Origin: Hyphochytrium catenoides
Taxonomy: Eukaryota; Protista; Hyphochytriomycota
Direction: 5' to 3'
Assembly (NCBI GenBank): GCA_900088475.1
Contig: FLMG01001623.1
Coordinates: forward strand, 1 to 64,000
Length of the DNA stretch: 64,000 nt
Shown: positions 13,401 to 23,009 of the stretch, piece after piece
How positions within the stretch are numbered: position 1 is the stretch's first letter
Layout of the letters: every line of letters starts with the position of its first letter
Translations under genes and position numbers: made by a program
Notes under the pieces: model-generated
Databases searched by the model: none
The model's input: only the letters and a program-made list of their open reading frames with translations
Told to the model about the DNA's origin: nothing

Positions 13401-14463
13401 AGATATCGAAGAGAACAGCGGCCTTACTTCCTGCAAGAAGCCGAGTAGGCCCTCGAAGCTAAGATCCTCCTTGTCGAAGGAAGAAACCTCATCCTCTTCA
13501 TTCTTTCCTTTCCTCCCAAGTTTGTGAACCACAATGACACGAGGGAACTTGTCAACATTGAAGCGTTCAATCAGCCTGAATTGACACCCGACTATTGAGT
13601 CCGTGGGGTGTCACCGGTGAGAAAAGGACGGACGTACTCATTTTCTCCCTTCTCCACCTCTGCAAAGACCAAGCCGCGTCCAGACAAGCGAACTGAGAGC
13701 GCTTTGTACATCGGTGCCGTCGTCTTCCTAGAAGTAAAGAGGACAACCGTGGAGTTGCCGCTCTTTTCGTTACGTCGTACGAACGTCTCAAAATCTGCCT
13801 GTTCTCGGGGCAACCCGCTTAGCAGTGAACAACGGAGCTTGATGGCTTCACTTAACTCACCCCTGTAAGTCTTGTCACGGACGAAGGCATAGCTTTTCCA
13901 GCAAATGAGGTAAGGGCTCTGGCGGTCCGTGGCCCGTCATAGATGGCATGCTGAATGACATCTGGTCAGACCACCGCACCTTTCTAGTAGAGGGTACACT
14001 GCTTTCCTTACCTCGCGAAAGATTTTGTTGGTGTACGGATTTTTCTGAGGCTCTGCCGTAAATGCCTGAGGATCGAGAGCCACACTTTAGTGCAGAGTAT
14101 CCTGGCTCTGCGCTTTTCACCTACCAGGATTGTAGGATAGCCCTGAACATTAAAGTGCCTTGCTAGCTTCTCATTCTGCGGCAAAGTGGCATCGATTGCT
14201 GCAAAGTTGGCCAGGTTGTTCATCTCTGTCGCAGCTTTTTCGTATTCGGGAGCTAGCTGCTTGCAGTGTCCACACCACGGGGCGTAGAACTCGACGAGCC
14301 ACATCTCATTACTTTCCATCACTCGGCGATTAAAGTCTTTCTCGGTCAACATAATCACCTTGGAGTTATCATCCTCATAAAATGCAGATACGAAGCTTGC
14401 TGTGCCCGTGAGCAGTAGCAACACCGCCAACCAGCCCCGTGGCCATCTGGCCAGAGGGCCCAT
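10412..14463 (-). CDS. ER protein disulfide isomerase family protein: one WCGHC domain plus several thioredoxin-like domains, KEEL retention signal (multi-exon)
   Basis: Signal peptide MGPLARWPRGWLAVLLLLTGTASFVSA, then WLVEFYAPWCGHCKQLAPEYEKAA and VQGYPTI. Later exons show thioredoxin-fold patterns (TVVLFTSRKTTAPMYKALS, LIKVGAVNCERFVDLC, QFGIAKLPAILAMIP, LCVIGVLNG). Charged tail ends KAKDEKEEL*. Confidence 0.85.
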
Positions 14464-15051
14464 ACTTAGGCTAAAGTAATTAGTAGAGCTAGGGTCTAGG
14501 CGAAGCAGGCGGCGCTTTCTTGCGCTAGCTAAGCTTTTTGGCTGCCAGCCCAATTGTGGTTTGAAGGAGGCGGCTCCTTGGGCAGAGCTTCCGGACGCGT
14601 ATACAAAAAGCCTGTAGGGGATGCCACGTAAACTGATGTAGTGTGATGTGTGATCTGTATGATGATGTTTCGTGTACTCGTAGGACATTTGGTGAATCTT
14701 GTACGCTGTACATCTTGTACACTTGTACAGTAGGTTGTACGCCTTCTGCTTCAACTTGCCCATCTCCTTGTGTGGTAGAAGAACGATCTTCAGATCTCAA
14801 CTGTTTATTTGAACAGTAGTGACGGTGGTGGGCAGGATGAAGCGAGATTGCAAAGATGCAATCTCCTCAACACAGTTCCGTCGTCGCTGGAAACGCTCAC
14901 TGCATGGATGGTATGCCAGTCACTTCTTCATCACTAATTGGCCCTGATGCTATCAAGACGGCGCGGCAATGAGCGCGAGAGTGAAGGAAGGCAATGATGA
15001 CTGCCCTAAAGGTCTCTCTTGAGAATCTACCTTGTCCCATGCCAAAGATTT

Positions 15052-16315: not shown

Positions 16316-17246
16316 TCTATGATGCCGGTAGGATTTTTTGCAGAAGGTACATCAACGAGACATCTTCTTCACACTCATCGCATGACGGTTAGTAGACAGT
16401 TGTCGTCAAGAAAGGTCCTCGCTCAAGCAGACAATTATTGTTTATGACCAGCGATGCCTCACAGCGCATACCGTCAAAGCTTCACATTATCATTCAAGAC
16501 CGGAAGCCTCTCAGTAACATTCAAGACCGACAATGATGGTGGAAAAGCGCGCTGATTCACGCTGCAGTAACATTGAGCAATCGAAAATAGATTTTCGTTA
16601 CGATTAAGGACAGCCTTTAAGCCAATCGGAAATCCTTTCTAGTCCGAATTGAGATTCTTAAAAGGTGTAACGCCCATCAGAAAGCGACCTCTAGACGGGC
16701 TTGCCGGTCCCCATTCCTATTCAGATCCTTATAAAGAGTGGTCTTCATGCAGTTCTTATTCGTTCATTTGCGACTGGCAGCGCGGAGAATTTATAAAGTA
16801 AATGACGATTCTGATCAGCAAAAGCCATAGAACTCACCAAGAATCATTCTGGCAAGAAGAAGAAAAACGACACTCCTTGTAATCAGAACGGCGAGTTAAC
16901 TATTCCCACAGCCTCATCTGGCGAATTTCCTATTCCTAACAAGAGACATCTCGAAGTTCTTTGCAGAAACTGTGGCCCATCCACCCTCACCATTGCCTAA
17001 GATAAAATCGTCCCCTCGTCGTTCTCCACCCATCACCATTCCTTCCAAAAAGTAACTTCAACCTTCAACTCCAGCGAGTAAACGGCGGAAGACAGAATCT
17101 GGGGAAGCCTTTATAAGCTCTTTGAAGCTCGTAGCCCGTGTTGCTGGAGCTTCGAGCCTCGGGCATTGCGAGCCTGTTTAGACTTTTCCCTGTTTGTTGC
17201 AAGTCAGCTGCAGATCCTAAGTGATTTGACAGCTCCATTATATACG

Positions 17247-20200
17247 ATGCGAAGCTTTGGAGTAGCTTGGAAGGGACAGGGGCCCGCTAACTTGGCACCT
17301 AAAGCTGGGGATGTCTTCGGCTTTGTTACTTTCAGTGGACGGCAAGTATACGCTCCACTTGCAGCCTTTGGGACACAATCGCTTCAGTCACCACTTAAGG
17401 GGAGATTGGTGATAGTAGACCCACTGGAGGCTGAGGCGACCGTGAAAAACGCTGAGGATGTGAGTCATTTTCACTGAAGTGCCTCTTTATGTTGCTGAGA
17501 ACAGCGCTGCCCTCCAGGTCCGTGGAGCAGTTGCACTGGTCATGCGTGGTAGTTGCACATTTCCTGTTAAGGCCCGAAGGGTTCAGGAAGCTGGGGCTGT
17601 GGCTTTGATTGTCGCCAACAATGAGGCCGATAAGCCCGCAGAGGCGTTCAAGATGGGAGAGATTCAGCCTGGTGAGGCTGCTGACATACGCATACCGTGC
17701 GTCATGCTCTCTTATGAGAATGTTCAGGTTTACCCATCATCGATTGCGAAGTCCATGATACGATATTCTAACTAATTATCTGTAGGAGCTACTCGTGTGG
17801 GCACATTCTACAAACGACGCGAGTGTCTCCCTCGAGTTGTTACTTGGTCGCGAAGCCGCTGTGGCGTTTCAAAGGGAGAAAGAACGGAAAGGGCCCTCCA
17901 TGGTAAGCCATATCCCCTTCCTAGCGTTTGGCCAAAATGACCATCACCTAACAAAAACGGACAGAACATTGATCCTCCACCGTCGCTACTTGACAGCCAG
18001 CTCTTAAGTCACTTTTTTCAAAAGTCTGAACGACTCTTCAAGTTCCTCGAGACCCCTCCAGCACGTAGCCCAGAGGCACCTGCGACAACAGATGAATCCA
18101 GGCATAAAACTGTACAAACTTCAGACTCTTCGAAGACCTCTATTCTCTCACCATCCGGGGCTGGAAATGGCAACAAAGACGAGTCTCATGGGCAGGGTGA
18201 TGGTGCAATGAATGAACATACCACTGCTGCAGCCAGGCCGATGTATGCTTTTGCCCGATGGGCCACTGGCACTAGTGGATTCAACATGCATTACGCCCCT
18301 CTAGCAGATTTTGGTGCCCCTGATTCCTGTATTGTCATAAGCGGCANNNNNNNNNNNNACAATGACCAGCAGTGTCCTCAATCAGCGTTTGTTATGGGCG
18401 TTGATAATCTGCCGGTTGAGCATATCCGCATTCCATCGGCAAGTTTCACAACGCTAGCTAAATGGTCTTACACTACTCTCACACAATGTGCCTGTAGGTC
18501 ATGATCTCATATGAGGTCCATCAGAAGCTCCTTAAGAACTTTCCTTCATGCTTAAGCATTGTGGTTCTCCAGGGGGAGGCTGCAGGCGGCGTACTAGGTA
18601 TTGATGACGCGGAATGGGTCCTCCAGAAGCCAATGAAGCCTCCTAGAACGATGCCACCGCTTCATCGGTAGGTTATAAACCCTACTCTGACTGAAATAGA
18701 GAGCCTTAGTCTATTTACATCTAGGGCTTGCCTTCAGGGCCACGTAGAGTTCGTCGAGCAACTGTTAAAGGGTTCAGTAGAGGTCAATGAGCGGGATCTA
18801 AAGCGCTTCACACCTTTGCATTATGCTGTGATCTCTGGAACCGCGAACGTCGTCGATATGCTGCTTGGGAAGAAGGCAGATGTCAACGCTCAGGTACATA
18901 AACGAATCGCGAGGCCATAATGTTCCAAACTAATCATCTCCGCAGGATTTAGCGGGACAAACACCCCTACATCACGCTTGTAGGGAGGGTGACGAAAATA
19001 TAGTTGAGAAACTCCTTGGCCATATGGCTAGATTCAACGTGCCAGATGTGGGCAAGCAGACTCCACTTCACCTGGCCTGCTCTAACGGAAACACTGCGAT
19101 TGTGGAGCTCCTGATGGCAGCTAGTGCCACGGTAGGGCGCGAGGGAAAGTATGAGTTTCATGGCGTGGACCAGCTGGACGCGGACCAGTGTACCCCTCTA
19201 CATCGCGCGTGTGAGGTAATAAATGACGATTCTCAGAAGCTGCAAGAGATCGGTGGGCTGACGCTATGTACAGGCAGGTAATGCAGAGTCAGCCCTATAC
19301 CTCTTAGCGGCTGGAGCACGGTATGACCTTAAGGATAAGAACGGCAAGACAGCGCTGCATCACGTCTGTCAGGCTATTAACAAGCCGGGGAAGTCAAGTT
19401 CAGCGCTAGAAGTAATTGAGAGGCTAATTTCAATGGGCGCAACAATGGAGGAGCAAGAAGGTCAAAGCGCTGCCCTTGACCTAGTCCAAAACAAACAACT
19501 AAGAAGAGACCTAGAAATCGCTTATCTGCGTAAACAAGCGAACCTTCAGAGACAAGCCTTGGATGTCCTGAGGGAAGATAAGGACAATTTGCAGGTGTGC
19601 GCTATTGCATTCTTCCAATCAATTTTTTTGCAACGCTCTTACGCTGCTGGGATAAACGCAGAAACTGCTGGCAAACTATGTAAGTCAGCAGATTCAAACA
19701 CAATTCAGACTGCAAGCTTCAATGAAAGAGCGCGAGGACATGAAGATACAGTTGCAGTCTCAGAATGTACAGCTTCAGCAACTACAGCTGCAGATGAAGA
19801 CGACACTGCAGTTTCTCCAAAAACTAAATGCAACGGTGGAAAGTAAGTTAACTTATTGAAACGCTAACTCCGCATGAGCTAATGGGGTTGGTTCATCACG
19901 GACTTTAAACAGGCCAAGGTTTAGGTATAAGCGGAGGGTCGGGGTGTGCGCCGCCGACAAGCATTGCTGTTGAGGCGGTTCAGATTTCGGACAACCTCAT
20001 GGATGACGGGAGTCGGGCGGAGGAGTCCGCTCTAGCACGGGATATTGCCAAAAAGCACAGACGTAATAAGGGTAAGGAGACCTCGCTAACTTCAATTATT
20101 GAAGAGGTGTAGTTGACATACTATCCAGACTACCAGAACGCTGTACTATACTTCAGGAAGTCCTTGAGCATTATGCCCTTGCCCGGTGTCCAGAAACTAC

Positions 20201-21937
20201 TTGATAAGGCTGTGGCAGAGTTGAAGGAAGACCAGAAGCGCAAAGCTGCGGAGCGAGCAGCTAGGTACCAACATCGGTGATTTACTGCTGTTCAAGGGCA
20301 TTAGACCTTAAACACGTGTACTTTTAGTCGAAAGGCTGAGACAAAGGAGGGCTTAGTGCGGCGCTATAAGAATACACTGCTTCGCAGCGGGTGCCCTGCA
20401 TCAGCTCTAGAAGCTATTGAGGTAGTTTGAAGGATGGTCTGCACATCTAACTCTATCCGGTCCGATAAAGCTCATTCTTCCTGCAGGCGGAAATCTTGAA
20501 GCTCGATACGTTGGACGAAGGGTCCCAGGAGTACATTTTGGCTAGAGATTGGCTAGACTGGCTTGTAGCTATGCCTTGGGGCGGTGACGTCCTTGAGGCT
20601 GTAAATATAGAAACATTCACGAAGGTAATTTAACTTCCGGCCGAGATTGTTATGTACGCTCGTCGTCTCTTACACGGGTATTCAGCTCGAAGAAGCACAG
20701 AGGCTCGATGAACTCCAGAAGCATAACGGCTTGGCTCTACGGATACAGGTTCAGAAACCCACCAAATTGACACCATTGGCCAAGTCTAACAATTGCGCTG
20801 TCACTCAGTCCTGGTGGAAAAGAGCTAAAAGAGTCCGTGACCAGCAAAGATGGAAATGCGCATCCGGGGTCCAGGCCTTATGGAGAGGATATCGATTGCG
20901 ACAACATCTCCCGTCAATAAGGGAGAAACTTCTTTCGGAGAAAGAGGGGAACGGATCCAGCGATACGGGTAGAGAAGCACTGACTTTTCTGACAGGGCTT
21001 GTAGAGTCTGATCGGGAAGTTTTCCTTAGGATCAATGGGCTATAATGAGGATGAAGACGAGCTGCTCTTTGACGCTGAAAAGGTATTCAGGGAGATGACA
21101 GAAAAGAACCACCTCCTTTTCCCTCCCAGAGAGCAGCTCGCTGAAACTATTGCCGCCGATGTCGACCGCCTTATTCCACCTCGCCTCCGACACTGCAAAC
21201 TGATGGTGGGAGTGCTATTATGGCAGGTATTCGTTGTTCCCTGTATAATGTGAAGCATGTTTTGTTTGCTTGATCAACTCTTCCGTGATTGTGATCATCC
21301 AGTGAAGTAGTTATTGGGTTATGCTTATCTCGTAGTGCCTTCTTCGGTAATGCCATCTCTAGACTCATCTCATACCTACAACATTAAAGCAGTGATTACA
21401 CTTTTCTAAATGGCTTGCTTTATGGTCTCACTTTTAGACTCCTGTCCTGTCCGATTTGGGCGCGGAAGAAAAGGAGCGTTTCCACATTCTTCAAGTGATT
21501 GATGCCAGCTCAGCAACGTTACCTGTTGAACTCGATAGCCAGCCAGCCGACAATCAGGGATATTATTGCTGGAACAGGTTGGAATACCCTCTTTTTGCTA
21601 CCACTGTCCCCTCATCTTCTTGAGGGCTACTGCCCTTTCTTCAACCTTAACGCGTTTCTAAGGAGCGTTTAGTGTATACTGATCGGCCTTCATTATCAGA
21701 TGGGGAGTCATTGGCACCAGGGGCCAGATGTCTATCAAGGGCCCTTACAATTTGGAAGGAGCTATGCGAGAGTTCAAGAAGCGATATTTTGAGAAGACCC
21801 TCAATCAATGGGGAACAGCTAGGGAAGAGTTCGTTCTTAGCTCACACCACTTTAAGCCAATCCTGTTCCCTATCCATGGAACCAAGTCTATCAGTGCGGA
21901 CGACAGAGAAAGAGCTCCACTGGCGGCGGCTTCTTAG
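17247..21937 (+). CDS. Multidomain protein: 2x PA domain, ankyrin repeats, coiled coil, TPR-like helix pair, Lon-type helical bundle, 2x IQ, C-terminal WGR domain
   Basis: About 17 exons joined in consistent phase. PA1: GAVALVMRGSCTFPVKARRVQEAGAVALIVANN...IRIPCVMLS. PA2 is broken by an N gap but ends IRIPS|VMISYE. Ankyrin: TPLHYAV, TPLHHAC, TPLHLAC, TPLHRAC, TALHHVC. IQ: IQ|SWWKR and VQALWRGYRLRQ. WGR: RFHILQVID...YYCWNR|WGVIGTRGQMSIKGPYNLEGAMREFKKRYFEKTLNQW. Stop TAG at 21935-21937. Confidence 0.8.
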
Positions 21938-22301: not shown

Positions 22302-23009
22302 CTACTCGTGATCTCCATCATGCCCGTGCCCGTGGCACTTGGGAACAATGCAGCCACTAGTAGACATGCAGTCTCTACGATGAAGAGCCACCAGCGTCTG
22401 CCAAAAATGGCAGGCTCTGCACGGTGACTCACCACTAGGAAGGCATTTATGCTGCTTCACCTTCTCAACTAAACGTCTTGTCGAGCGGCAGAGCATCCTG
22501 TCGCAGCCATCGCATGTAGAGATGTGGTGCAGGCCTTTGCGGACCGACTGGACCTTCAAAACCAGTTCTCGAAGCTTTCTATTGCTATCGCAGCGCTGTT
22601 CGAAGGCCTCCAATGTCTGAAAGGCCTTGCTCCGGACGACAACATCCTCTCCCACGTCGCCGCCTCCAACAGCAGGTCGACGGCTGATAGACGAATGGCT
22701 TAAAAGCTGGAAAATGTTGCGCCTCGTACCGACTTCTGAGGGTTTTTTGGGACGCAAGCTGATGACGCCTGGCCTTTTCCTAGCAATTCTAACCTTTCGT
22801 GGTGAATTTTGAGAGGGTACCAGGGCCAAGGGCACGCTTCGCATGACATCCGCTCCGAGATGCGGGAAAGTTGTTGGCAGCTCCTGCTGTAGAGGTGGTG
22901 CCATGCTCTCGGTCCCTGGCTCCAATATCATGGGAATAGCTACAACAACGTCATCTTGCTTCAAGAAGGGAAGCGCTTCGCCAATGGTGTTGTGCTTGAC
23001 AGTCTGCAT
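22302..23009 (-). CDS. Small stand-alone TAZ-type zinc finger protein
   Basis: Single 235-aa ORF. C-terminal LHHISTCDGCDRMLC...QHKC...PCRAC...LVALHRRDCMSTSGCIVPKC follows the TAZ H-x3-C-xn-C-xn-C triplet pattern. Confidence 0.7.
   Translation of the reverse strand: MQTVKHNTIGEALPFLKQDDVVVAIPMILEPGTESMAPPLQQELPTTFPHLGADVMRSVPLALVPSQNSPRKVRIARKRPGVISLRPKKPSEVGTRRNIFQLLSHSSISRRPAVGGGDVGEDVVVRSKAFQTLEAFEQRCDSNRKLRELVLKVQSVRKGLHHISTCDGCDRMLCRSTRRLVEKVKQHKCLPSGESPCRACHFWQTLVALHRRDCMSTSGCIVPKCHGHGHDGDHE

What the first reader, a model, noticed from the sequence alone, without database searches (positions are those of the whole stretch)
17247..21937. One gene joining two PA domains, ankyrin repeats, TPR, a Lon-protease helix, IQ motifs and a WGR domain
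Seen: the separate ORFs from 17166 to 21937 splice into one frame. Introns 20969-21029 (DTG|SMGY), 21227-21437 and 21578-21699 (CWNR|WGV) join cleanly. Known: PA domains normally sit in luminal or extracellular proteases and sorting receptors. WGR domains bind nucleic acid in PARP1-3 and some bacterial proteins. IQ motifs bind calmodulin. Here there is no evident signal peptide, no protease catalytic domain and no PARP catalytic domain, and the WGR motif reads WGV. Inference: a catalytically empty cytosolic or nuclear scaffold linking peptide recognition, Ca2+/calmodulin and nucleic-acid or poly(ADP-ribose) sensing. I know no characterised protein with this architecture.
Basis: partly seen in the sequence, partly recalled or inferred. 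Interest (0 to 1): 0.85.

Follow-up and report, generated by a model that had tools for sequence, protein, structure and literature searches.

The report
Conserved oomycete-lineage PA-ankyrin-WGR scaffold gene
The ORFs do splice into one real 17-exon gene for a large enzyme-less protein with an odd domain mix; unstudied single-copy counterparts are already in the public databases for water moulds such as Phytophthora.

Summary
Observation confirmed. Window 17247-21937 (+) splices through 16 introns into one frame of about 1170 codons. Fourteen introns are 52-70 nt; one uses a GC donor.

Domain tests:
- PA, ankyrin and WGR pass Pfam cut-offs; IQ passes barely.
- The Lon piece is 41% identical to the Lon three-helix bundle.
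- TPR is sub-threshold.
- The second PA domain is real, but its core lies in the assembly gap. About 54 residues are missing, so the in-frame reading across the 12 N means nothing.

One gene, not several. An ankyrin repeat spans the exon 5/6 junction. A 1117-aa intron-less metagenomic ortholog carries the whole architecture in one ORF.

It is not an orphan. About 35 single-copy orthologs exist, and all named ones are oomycetes. They are auto-annotated only, and I found no paper on them.

Both PA domains keep the RGxCxF loop that binds peptide C-termini in plant sorting receptors. The WGR arginine and most PARP2 DNA contacts are not conserved, so DNA or PAR sensing is doubtful. The most likely role is a soluble, non-catalytic adaptor; this is inferred, not shown.

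No RNA run was listed. The scan had noted this same stretch before, not other DNA.

The parts
17247..21937 (+). Whole coding region: 17 exons, 16 introns, about 1170 codons as assembled (about 1220 once the gap is filled)
   Evidence: Splice model. Collinear with the intron-less 1117-aa ortholog P0012 (BLASTP 37% identity, model aa 23-1155) and with oomycete orthologs.
17247..17902 (+). PA domain 1 (exons 1-3), with RGSCTF cargo-loop motif in exon 2
   Evidence: Pfam PA 57.4 bits on exon 2. RGxCxF kept in 11 of 12 family members. The start Met aligns with the start of the orthologs, and no ortholog shown has a hydrophobic N-terminal leader.
17965..18667 (+). Variable acidic/Ser-rich linker, then PA domain 2 (exons 4-5), interrupted by the assembly gap. 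Intron 4 has a GC donor.
   Evidence: Internal duplication of PA1. The IPS|VMISY junction is ungapped against all 11 orthologs.
18347..18358 (.). Assembly gap (12 N) that hides about 54 codons of the PA2 core, including its RGxCxF loop
   Evidence: P0012 has 54 residues opposite the gap. The flanks align to PA1 35-59 and 105-165.
18647..19450 (+). Ankyrin repeat block. The first repeat starts in exon 5 and runs on through exons 6-8.
   Evidence: Pfam Ank and Ank_2 on exons 6-8. A 39-aa peptide across the exon 5/6 junction scores Ank 27.1 bits, E 4.4e-6.
19451..19842 (+). Long helical, probably coiled-coil, segment (end of exon 8 and exon 9) with conserved LRRE.EV.YLR and QLQ.QM..LQ motifs
   Evidence: Family alignment. 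That it is a coiled coil is inferred from the sequence pattern; no coiled-coil predictor was run.
20020..20215 (+). Single TPR-like helix pair (exons 10-11) with conserved YF..SL.L.PLPGV.RLL
   Evidence: TPR_2 at 21.4 and 19.9 bits in the orthologs, below the cut-off of 27. The motif is conserved across the family.
20358..20591 (+). Lon-protease-like three-helix bundle (exons 12-13), motif W..WL..LPW
   Evidence: PDB LONP1/LonA hits, E 3e-4. 41% identity over 56 aa to Lon residues 265-320, which lie between LON_substr_bdg and AAA. 502 metagenomic loci match only this Lon-like piece (Lon identity inferred, not checked by domain scan). AF2 model: top 50 PDB folds are all Lon, including the LonA 3-helix-bundle fragment 4ypn.
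20686..20968 (+). IQ region (exon 14). The canonical IQ motif lies at about 20854-20910; a degenerate one lies upstream.
   Evidence: Pfam IQ 21.2 bits against cut-off 20.3. IQxxxRGxxxR-type motif kept in the family; the central RG is in 11 of 12. Modelled as one long helix in the ortholog.
21030..21226 (+). Acidic linker and pre-WGR segment (exon 15)
   Evidence: Aligns with P0012 and with pre-WGR residues of a PARP homolog.
21438..21868 (+). C-terminal WGR-like domain (exons 16-17, split by the 122-nt intron 16), motif RWGV instead of RWGR
   Evidence: Pfam WGR 33.4 bits. PARP3 WGR 2eoc, E 1e-4. AF2 model of the ortholog: top 30 PDB matches are all PARP1/2/3 WGR, target TM 0.65-0.78 for isolated WGR chains, rmsd 1.7-2.8 A except one NMR entry.

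Best explanation
Window 17247-21937 is a single 17-exon protein-coding gene. It is the ortholog, in this oomycete relative, of a single-copy family found across oomycetes.

Domain order: PA - linker - PA - about 6 ankyrin repeats - long helical or coiled-coil segment - one TPR-like hairpin - Lon-type three-helix bundle - two IQ motifs - acidic linker - C-terminal WGR-like domain.

No member has a signal peptide, a membrane segment, a protease domain, or a PARP regulatory or catalytic domain.

Most likely mode of action (inferred, not shown): a soluble, non-enzymatic adaptor.
- The two PA domains, which keep the RGxCxF loop, would capture free C-termini or short peptides of client proteins.
- The ankyrin and TPR-like parts would bind partners.
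- The coiled coil plus the Lon-type bundle would form an oligomerising stalk.
- The IQ helix would carry calmodulin or a calmodulin-like light chain.
- The WGR-like domain has lost the PARP-type DNA-break contacts, so it would serve as a repurposed interaction or structural module rather than a canonical DNA-nick sensor.

Shown: gene structure, domain identities, conservation and taxonomic range. Inferred: every binding activity, the location in the cell and the oligomeric state.
For: Gene unity:
- One frame runs through 16 introns with canonical sites.
- Domains are split by introns: PA1 by introns 1-2, PA2 by intron 4, WGR by intron 16.
- The exon 5/6 junction peptide is an ankyrin repeat (27.1 bits).
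- P0012 carries the whole architecture in one 1117-aa ORF on three independent contigs.
- Six exon junctions (introns 1, 4, 5, 7, 10, 12) sit in stretches that are gap-free in all or all but one of the 12 aligned sequences.

Family:
- Searches with P0012 and with the family profile gave about 35 orthologs with mostly 75-99% coverage, then a cliff to generic ankyrin proteins.
- The tree mirrors oomycete taxonomy and places the window with P0012 and P0119 (support 100/99).

Domains. The C-termini of the oomycete orthologs match a PARP WGR profile (hhalign probability 97.7%, E 1.8e-12).

Functional motifs:
- RGxCxF is kept in PA1 in 11 of 12 and in PA2 in 11 of 11. In plant VSR1 this loop's Arg binds the cargo C-terminal carboxylate (PMC8740768).
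- W..WL..LPW is kept in all 11 sequences that cover that region, and the IQ motif's RG in 11 of 12.

Soluble and non-catalytic: no TM segment, short non-hydrophobic N-termini in the orthologs, and no enzyme domain in Pfam.
Against: - There is no transcript evidence for this locus; no RNA run was listed.
- The assembly gap hides about 54 codons, so an inactivating change there cannot be excluded.
- No binding activity has been tested for any family member.
- PA domains are otherwise almost always luminal or extracellular. A cytosolic peptide-binding role is therefore an extrapolation from VSR1.
- IQ reaches the Pfam cut-off by less than 1 bit in the window, and is below it in the orthologs scanned (13.2-20.1 bits).
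- The window protein and P0012 keep more PARP2 DNA-contact equivalents than the crown oomycetes do (Trp, Gln, three basic positions). Some nucleic-acid affinity in this lineage is not excluded.
Confidence: 0.6

Rival explanations
1. One reading: the WGR domain is still a nucleic-acid-end or poly(ADP-ribose) sensor. The protein would then couple DNA or PAR sensing to Ca2+/calmodulin and peptide recognition.
For: A genuine WGR fold. The window and P0012 keep equivalents of PARP2 W151, Q159, K130 (as R/K), K179 (as R/K) and K183. The RWG core is invariant.
Against: The WGR Arg (PARP2 R153) is V here and is Arg in only 1 of 12 family members. Its partner N127 is lost, Y201 (the 5'-phosphate contact) is never Tyr, and K179 and K183 are mostly non-basic in Peronosporales (contact list from PMC6294510). 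The conserved positions look like fold core. No family member carries another DNA-binding or PAR-related domain.
Confidence: 0.2
2. Two or more neighbouring genes, for example a PA-PA gene and an Ank-to-WGR gene, wrongly joined by in-silico splicing.
For: No RNA evidence at this locus. In-frame stops follow the donors of exons 5 and 13 if those introns are read through.
Against: The exon 5/6 junction rebuilds an ankyrin repeat. Exon 14 has no in-frame ATG. P0012 and about 35 orthologs encode the full architecture as one protein, with no introns in P0012. The junctions align without gaps.
Confidence: 0.03
3. The copy in this genome is a decaying pseudogene whose defect is hidden in the assembly gap.
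For: About 160 nt or more of coding sequence is unread, and no expression data exist.
Against: All 1164 readable codons are open across 16 introns. The conserved motifs are intact. The window's end branch is long (1.61 against a median of 0.3). Its clade partners are long too (0.96 and 3.35), so this fits a divergent lineage as well as decay.
Confidence: 0.05
4. The N-terminal PA domains are luminal or extracellular, as in sorting receptors, because of an unrecognised upstream signal-peptide exon.
For: PA domains are typically luminal. The frame stays open for 147 nt upstream of the ATG, and AG dinucleotides occur there.
Against: No TM segment separates the PA part from the Ank/IQ/WGR part. 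The orthologs shown start within a few residues of the same position, without hydrophobic leaders, and intron-less P0012 starts with MKERVFGF.
Confidence: 0.03

Closest known systems
Uncharacterised oomycete 'PA domain-containing protein' family. Examples: Thraustotheca clavata THRCLA_01151, Saprolegnia diclina VS20 hypothetical protein, Phytophthora infestans PITG_20558 (partial model), and an Aphanomyces astaci entry named 'WGR domain-containing protein' in UniRef.
   Same: Full-length collinear similarity (24-32% identity by BLASTP, 28-32% in the MAFFT alignment). The same domain order and the same conserved motifs: RGxCxF twice, W..WL..LPW, IQxxxRGxxxR and RWG. Single copy, and the tree follows taxonomy.
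   Different: The window gene is intron-rich (16 introns) and belongs to a separate deep clade with two metagenomic sequences. Its WGR domain is less degenerate and passes the Pfam cut-off, whereas most oomycete orthologs do not.
PARP1/2/3 (WGR-PRD-catalytic), including clade 1A PARPs of Dictyostelium, fungi and Paramecium, which have ankyrin repeats before the WGR (PMC2964712)
   Same: WGR fold, best matched by PARP3 and PARP2 WGR. Clade 1A PARPs also place ankyrin repeats upstream of a WGR.
   Different: No PRD and no catalytic domain; the protein ends soon after the WGR in all orthologs. The WGR Arg and most DNA contacts are lost. The PA, Lon-bundle and IQ parts are absent from PARPs.
LonA / LONP1 protease
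   Same: About 56 residues are homologous to the three-helix bundle that precedes the AAA+ module: 41% identity, with a matching predicted fold.
   Different: No Lon substrate-binding N domain, AAA+ module or S16 protease domain.
Plant vacuolar sorting receptors and RMR / PA-TM-RING proteins (PA-domain cargo receptors)
   Same: PA fold with the RGxCxF cargo-binding loop.
   Different: No signal peptide, TM segment, EGF or RING. The PA domain is duplicated and fused to domain types that are typically cytosolic (general knowledge of these families).
Ankyrin-plus-IQ scaffolds such as inversin, and TPR-ankyrin-coiled-coil proteins (TANC). Named from general knowledge, not tested here.
   Same: Non-catalytic combinations of ankyrin repeats with IQ or TPR and coiled-coil elements.
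   Different: No sequence relationship was detected beyond the repeats. None has a PA domain, a Lon bundle or a WGR.

Membership tests
Oomycete-lineage PA-Ank-WGR family (UniRef 'PA domain-containing protein') | Collinear similarity over nearly the full length | tested here: met
   BLASTP of the spliced model: P0012 37% identity over model aa 23-1155; oomycete orthologs 24-32%, most spanning about aa 24-1120 or more. MAFFT identities 28-42%.
Oomycete-lineage PA-Ank-WGR family (UniRef 'PA domain-containing protein') | Two N-terminal PA domains, each with RGxCxF | tested here: inconclusive
   PA1 is met (RGSCTF, Pfam 57 bits). Both flanks of PA2 are present, but its RGxCxF core lies in the assembly gap.
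Oomycete-lineage PA-Ank-WGR family (UniRef 'PA domain-containing protein') | Family motifs W..WL..LPW, IQxxxRGxxxR and C-terminal RWG | tested here: met
   All three are present in the window protein, with VQ in place of IQ in the IQ motif.
Oomycete-lineage PA-Ank-WGR family (UniRef 'PA domain-containing protein') | Groups inside the family in a tree | tested here: met
   Clade with P0012 and P0119 at 100/99, sister by midpoint rooting to Saprolegniales plus Peronosporales-type orthologs. The root is not established.
PARP1-3 type ADP-ribosyltransferases | WGR fold | tested here: met
   Pfam WGR 33.4 bits. Foldseek top 30 are all PARP WGR.
PARP1-3 type ADP-ribosyltransferases | PARP regulatory (PRD) and catalytic domains | tested here: not met
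   No PF02877 or PF00644 hit in the window pieces or in P0012-P0022. The stop lies 23 codons after the last position that aligns with the ortholog L001 (aa 1147), and a convergent ORF follows from 22302.
PARP1-3 type ADP-ribosyltransferases | WGR Arg and the DNA-break contact set | tested here: not met
   Arg is replaced by Val. Of 10 mapped PARP2 positions, 5 are retained or conservatively replaced in the window, and only Trp is invariant across the family.
LonA protease | Three-helix bundle preceding the AAA+ module | tested here: met
   41% identity over 56 aa to Lon residues 265-320. Fold matches to Lon chains, including 4ypn. The MSA used for the model contained Lon sequences, which may bias the fold match.
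LonA protease | LON substrate-binding N domain, AAA+ ATPase and S16 protease domain | tested here: not met
   No such Pfam hits, whereas the true Lon P0011 has all of them.
PA-domain cargo receptors (VSR, RMR, PA-TM-RING) | PA domain with RGxCxF loop | tested here: met
   the loop's function is taken from PMC8740768.
PA-domain cargo receptors (VSR, RMR, PA-TM-RING) | Signal peptide and transmembrane anchor | tested here: not met
   Maximum 19-residue hydropathy 1.52, and a polar N-terminus in the window and the orthologs. No dedicated signal-peptide predictor was available.
IQ calmodulin-binding motif | Match to the IQ profile or the IQxxxRGxxxR consensus | tested here: met
   Pfam IQ 21.2 bits against cut-off 20.3. 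The consensus is conserved, with the central RG in 11 of 12. Calmodulin binding itself cannot be tested with these tools.
TPR repeat proteins | Profile match above threshold, normally three or more tandem repeats | tested here: inconclusive
   A single motif: TPR_2 at 21.4 and 19.9 bits in the orthologs against cut-off 27, and no hit on the window exon pieces.

The most novel reading that the evidence does not exclude
The whole family, not just this gene, could be a new kind of non-catalytic sensor-scaffold specific to the oomycete lineage. In that reading, cytosolic PA domains read protein C-termini, and a WGR module that has lost its partner PARP domains has been re-used. It would be carried on a Lon-derived stalk and regulated by calmodulin. 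This would be the first cytosolic PA-domain receptor, and the first defined role for a WGR outside PARPs in eukaryotes.
Probability: 0.25. Interest if true: 0.6.

Novelty: new member of a known kind. Interest (0 to 1): 0.4.

Why it matters
The gene shows that an unusual domain combination is not an annotation artefact. It is an old, single-copy, vertically inherited protein of oomycetes and their relatives, a group that includes major crop and fish pathogens.

Three points are new relative to the database annotation:
- The Lon-type three-helix bundle is not annotated in any of the entries retrieved here.
- The C-terminal WGR homology is missed by Pfam in most oomycete members.
- PA domains with an intact cargo loop occur here in a protein that has no signal peptide or membrane anchor.

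If the PA domains do bind peptide C-termini in the cytosol, the known biology of PA domains would widen. The family also offers a natural case of a WGR domain evolving without a PARP partner.

As it stands this is a well-supported gene model and family assignment with a speculative function. It is not a mechanistic discovery.

Tried and rejected
- RNA evidence: the look-up of sequencing runs listed no RNA run.
- Exhaustive HMMER with the WGR exon against 1.84 billion representatives gave only a 196-aa fragment plus generic PARP/WGR proteins. This first looked like an orphan. The fragment's cluster mate P0012 then opened up the family.
- The word-index search with the 473-aa metagenomic ORF found only a Lon protease, because of the length window.
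- A JGI metagenome scan with the TPR-motif patterns found nothing.
- The scan with the Lon-motif patterns returned 502 loci that match only the Lon-like piece and align as Lon (not domain-scanned), and no ortholog.
- ESM Atlas searches found no ortholog cluster.
- Rfam found nothing in the window or in the two long introns.
- Paper searches for the family names and for PITG_20558 were blank.
- Considered and rejected: a relic of an Ank-WGR-PRD-PARP (clade 1A) gene with a decayed catalytic end. Only 364 nt lie between the stop and the convergent ORF at 22302, and the intron-less ortholog also stops soon after its WGR-like domain, with an EF-Ts gene a few hundred nt downstream.
- The Cys/His-rich downstream ORF looked TAZ-like by eye but has no Pfam hit.

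Full report
**What is in the sequence**

Translating the three forward frames between 17100 and 22300 gives a chain of open segments. These can be joined by 16 introns into one frame of 1169 codons plus stop. Fifteen donors are GT and all acceptors are AG. Intron 4 uses GCAAGT. Fourteen introns are 52-70 nt; the last two are 211 and 122 nt. The window has about 50% G+C and carries several short N runs.

**The assembly gap, tested first**

The 12 N at 18347-18358 lie inside exon 4, in the second PA domain.
- The residues before the gap align with PA domain 1 at about positions 35-59 (shared YAPLA.FG).
- The residues after it align with PA1 105-165, with score 69 against 27.6 +/- 5.0 for shuffles.
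- The full-length ortholog found later has 54 residues opposite the gap, including the RGxCxF loop.

So both flanks belong to the same domain of the same gene, but about 160 nt or more are unread. This could include an intron, as in PA1. The frame happens to stay open across 12 N, and that is not evidence of anything.

**Domain checks**

Spliced proteins could not be handed to the tools, so each exon was searched by reference.

| Domain | Result |
|---|---|
| PA (exon 2) | Pfam 57.4 bits |
| Ankyrin (exons 6-8) | Pfam families up to 80.7 bits |
| IQ (exon 14) | 21.2 bits, cut-off 20.3 |
| WGR (exon 17, C-terminal half only) | 33.4 bits, cut-off 22 |
| WGR, nearest solved relative | PARP3 WGR 2eoc, E 1e-4 |
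| Lon piece (exon 13) | no Pfam model; LONP1/LonA chains in PDB, E about 3e-4 |
| TPR | one sub-threshold motif in the orthologs, 21.4 and 19.9 bits against 27 |

The equivalent stretch of the ortholog is 41% identical over 56 residues to residues 265-320 of a JGI Lon protease. That stretch sits between the LON_substr_bdg and AAA domains. It corresponds to the three-helix bundle in front of the AAA+ module.

AlphaFold models of the ortholog support both folds.
- The WGR part has pLDDT of about 90. Its top 30 PDB matches are all PARP1/2/3 WGR domains.
- For the helical part, the top 50 matches are all Lon, including the LonA 3-helix-bundle fragment 4ypn. That MSA contained Lon sequences, which may bias the match.

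No segment is hydrophobic enough to be a membrane span, and the N-terminus is polar.

**Is it one gene?**

No RNA run was listed for this stretch, so the argument is comparative and internal.

Internal evidence:
- Several domains are split by the predicted introns.
- Exon 5 carries both the last strand of PA2 and the start of the first ankyrin repeat.
- A 39-residue peptide across the exon 5/6 junction scores as an ankyrin repeat (27.1 bits, E 4.4e-6).
- Exon 14 has no in-frame ATG, so it cannot start a separate gene.

Comparative evidence came in steps.
1. An exhaustive HMMER search with the WGR exon found only one ortholog-like hit, the 196-aa fragment P0001.
2. Its contig L001 holds an intron-less ORF that is collinear with model residues 422-1147 (37% identity).
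3. P0001's 90% cluster contains P0012, a 1117-aa protein called as a single gene on three independent metagenome or Logan contigs.
4. By Pfam, P0012 has PA (two stretches), Ank, a TPR-like motif and WGR. It bridges the scaffold gap in L001.
5. It starts at the position equivalent to the window's ATG, without a leader peptide.
6. Six of the window's exon junctions (introns 1, 4, 5, 7, 10, 12) fall in stretches that are gap-free in all or all but one of the 12 aligned sequences. These include the GC-donor intron 4 (IPS|VMISY). The junction at intron 16 is also well conserved.

**The family**

Using P0012, and then a profile of ten members, as query returned about 35 proteins, most of them 1000-1350 residues long and covering 75-99% of the query. 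Below them the scores drop sharply to generic ankyrin proteins.

Every named member is an oomycete: Phytophthora (many species, including P. infestans PITG_20558), Nothophytophthora, Pythium, Globisporangium, Lagenidium, Saprolegnia, Achlya, Thraustotheca and Aphanomyces.

The names are automatic or misleading: 'PA domain-containing protein', 'hypothetical protein', 'Ankycorbin', 'Ankyrin repeat and SOCS box protein 13'. One Aphanomyces astaci entry is called 'WGR domain-containing protein'.

A maximum-likelihood tree follows oomycete taxonomy, almost always with one sequence per species. It places the window protein with P0012 and a Logan sequence in a third clade (100/99). This fits an earlier scan note that the organism is a close relative of oomycetes (s1-333875). 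I did not otherwise test that note.

Most oomycete members fall below the Pfam WGR cut-off. Their C-termini nevertheless match a PARP WGR profile with hhalign (probability 97.7%, E 1.8e-12).

Paper searches for the family names and for PITG_20558 found nothing.

**What the conservation says about function**

| Feature | Conservation |
|---|---|
| RGxCxF, PA1 | 11 of 12 |
| RGxCxF, PA2 | 11 of 11 (the window's copy lies in the gap) |
| Lon-bundle motif W..WL..LPW | all 11 sequences that cover the region |
| IQxxxRGxxxR | central RG in 11 of 12 |
| RWG in the WGR-like domain | invariant |
| Arg of 'WGR' (PARP2 R153) | 1 of 12 |
| Partner of that Arg (N127) | lost |
| 5'-phosphate contact (Y201) | never Tyr |
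| K179 and K183 equivalents | mostly non-basic in Peronosporales |

In Arabidopsis VSR1 the Arg of the RGxCxF loop binds the C-terminal carboxylate of the cargo peptide (PMC8740768). The PARP2 contact list is from PMC6294510. Mapping of the N-terminal contacts rests on the conserved NNNKFY/KFHILQ block together with my recollection of the human PARP2 sequence. That recollection agrees with the paper's residue numbering.

The window protein and P0012 keep more of these positions than the crown oomycetes do: Trp, Gln and three basic positions.

**Most likely mechanism**

The protein is most likely a soluble, non-enzymatic adaptor.
- Two PA domains would act as readers of peptide C-termini.
- Ankyrin and TPR-like surfaces would bind partners.
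- A coiled coil plus the Lon-type bundle would act as a stalk or oligomerisation element.
- An IQ helix would carry calmodulin or a related light chain.
- The WGR-derived end domain would have a conserved role that is probably not canonical DNA-break sensing.

Gene structure, domain identity, conservation and taxonomic range are shown. All activities, the localisation and the oligomeric state are inferred. I put about 0.95 on the gene and family statements and about 0.4 on the functional picture.

**Comparison with known systems**

It shares a fold with the PARP WGR domain but fails PARP membership, because it has no PRD, no catalytic domain and has lost the contact residues. Clade 1A PARPs also combine ankyrin repeats with a WGR (PMC2964712). 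However, both the window gene and the intron-less ortholog end soon after the WGR, so a recently truncated PARP is unlikely.

It shares one small sub-domain with Lon and fails every other Lon feature. It shares the PA cargo loop with the plant sorting receptors, but lacks their signal peptide and membrane anchor.

**Verdict**

The architecture is genuinely unusual and unstudied, but it is not unique to this genome. It is a new, intron-rich, deep-branching member of an existing and uncharacterised oomycete-lineage family. Interest is moderate.

Noticed in passing
window 14011-14763 (- strand): Upstream divergent neighbour: an ORF with a hydrophobic leader-like stretch and a thioredoxin domain carrying a CGHC motif (Pfam Thioredoxin 87 bits). 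It looks like an exon of a protein disulfide isomerase-like gene. About 2.5 kb separate it from the PA-Ank-WGR start, and I recognised no gene in between.
   Followed up: partly
window 22305-23009 (- strand): Convergent downstream ORF of 235 aa, rich in Cys and His near its C-terminal end. It looked like a TAZ-type zinc finger by eye but has no Pfam hit at E <= 0.001. Its stop lies 364 nt from the stop of the PA-Ank-WGR gene.
   Followed up: partly
window 18439-18497: Intron 4 uses a GC-AG splice pair (donor GCAAGT). The junction is supported by an ungapped IPS|VMISY alignment in all 11 orthologs.
   Followed up: yes
window 21227-21437 and 21578-21699: The last two introns (211 and 122 nt) are two to four times the usual length of about 58 nt. 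Rfam finds no RNA family in them, even at E <= 1. What the extra length holds is unknown.
   Followed up: partly
L082 2850-9359; L083 1632-2630: In the metagenomic relative that carries P0012, the gene sits next to a cluster of four GH5 cellulase-family genes. It is followed by EF-Ts (with an N-terminal extension, probably mitochondrial), FKBP-TPR and Josephin genes, all apparently without introns and closely packed. This suggests a compact, intron-poor eukaryote related to the window organism.
   Followed up: no
same genome, other windows (scan notes s1-352559, s1-365098, s1-352587): Other first-stage notes report further PA-domain fusions without a signal peptide or catalytic partner in this genome: PA-coiled coil-isochorismatase, and a PA domain inside an RNF126-like RING protein. 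If real, cytosolic use of PA domains may be a wider habit of this lineage.
   Followed up: no
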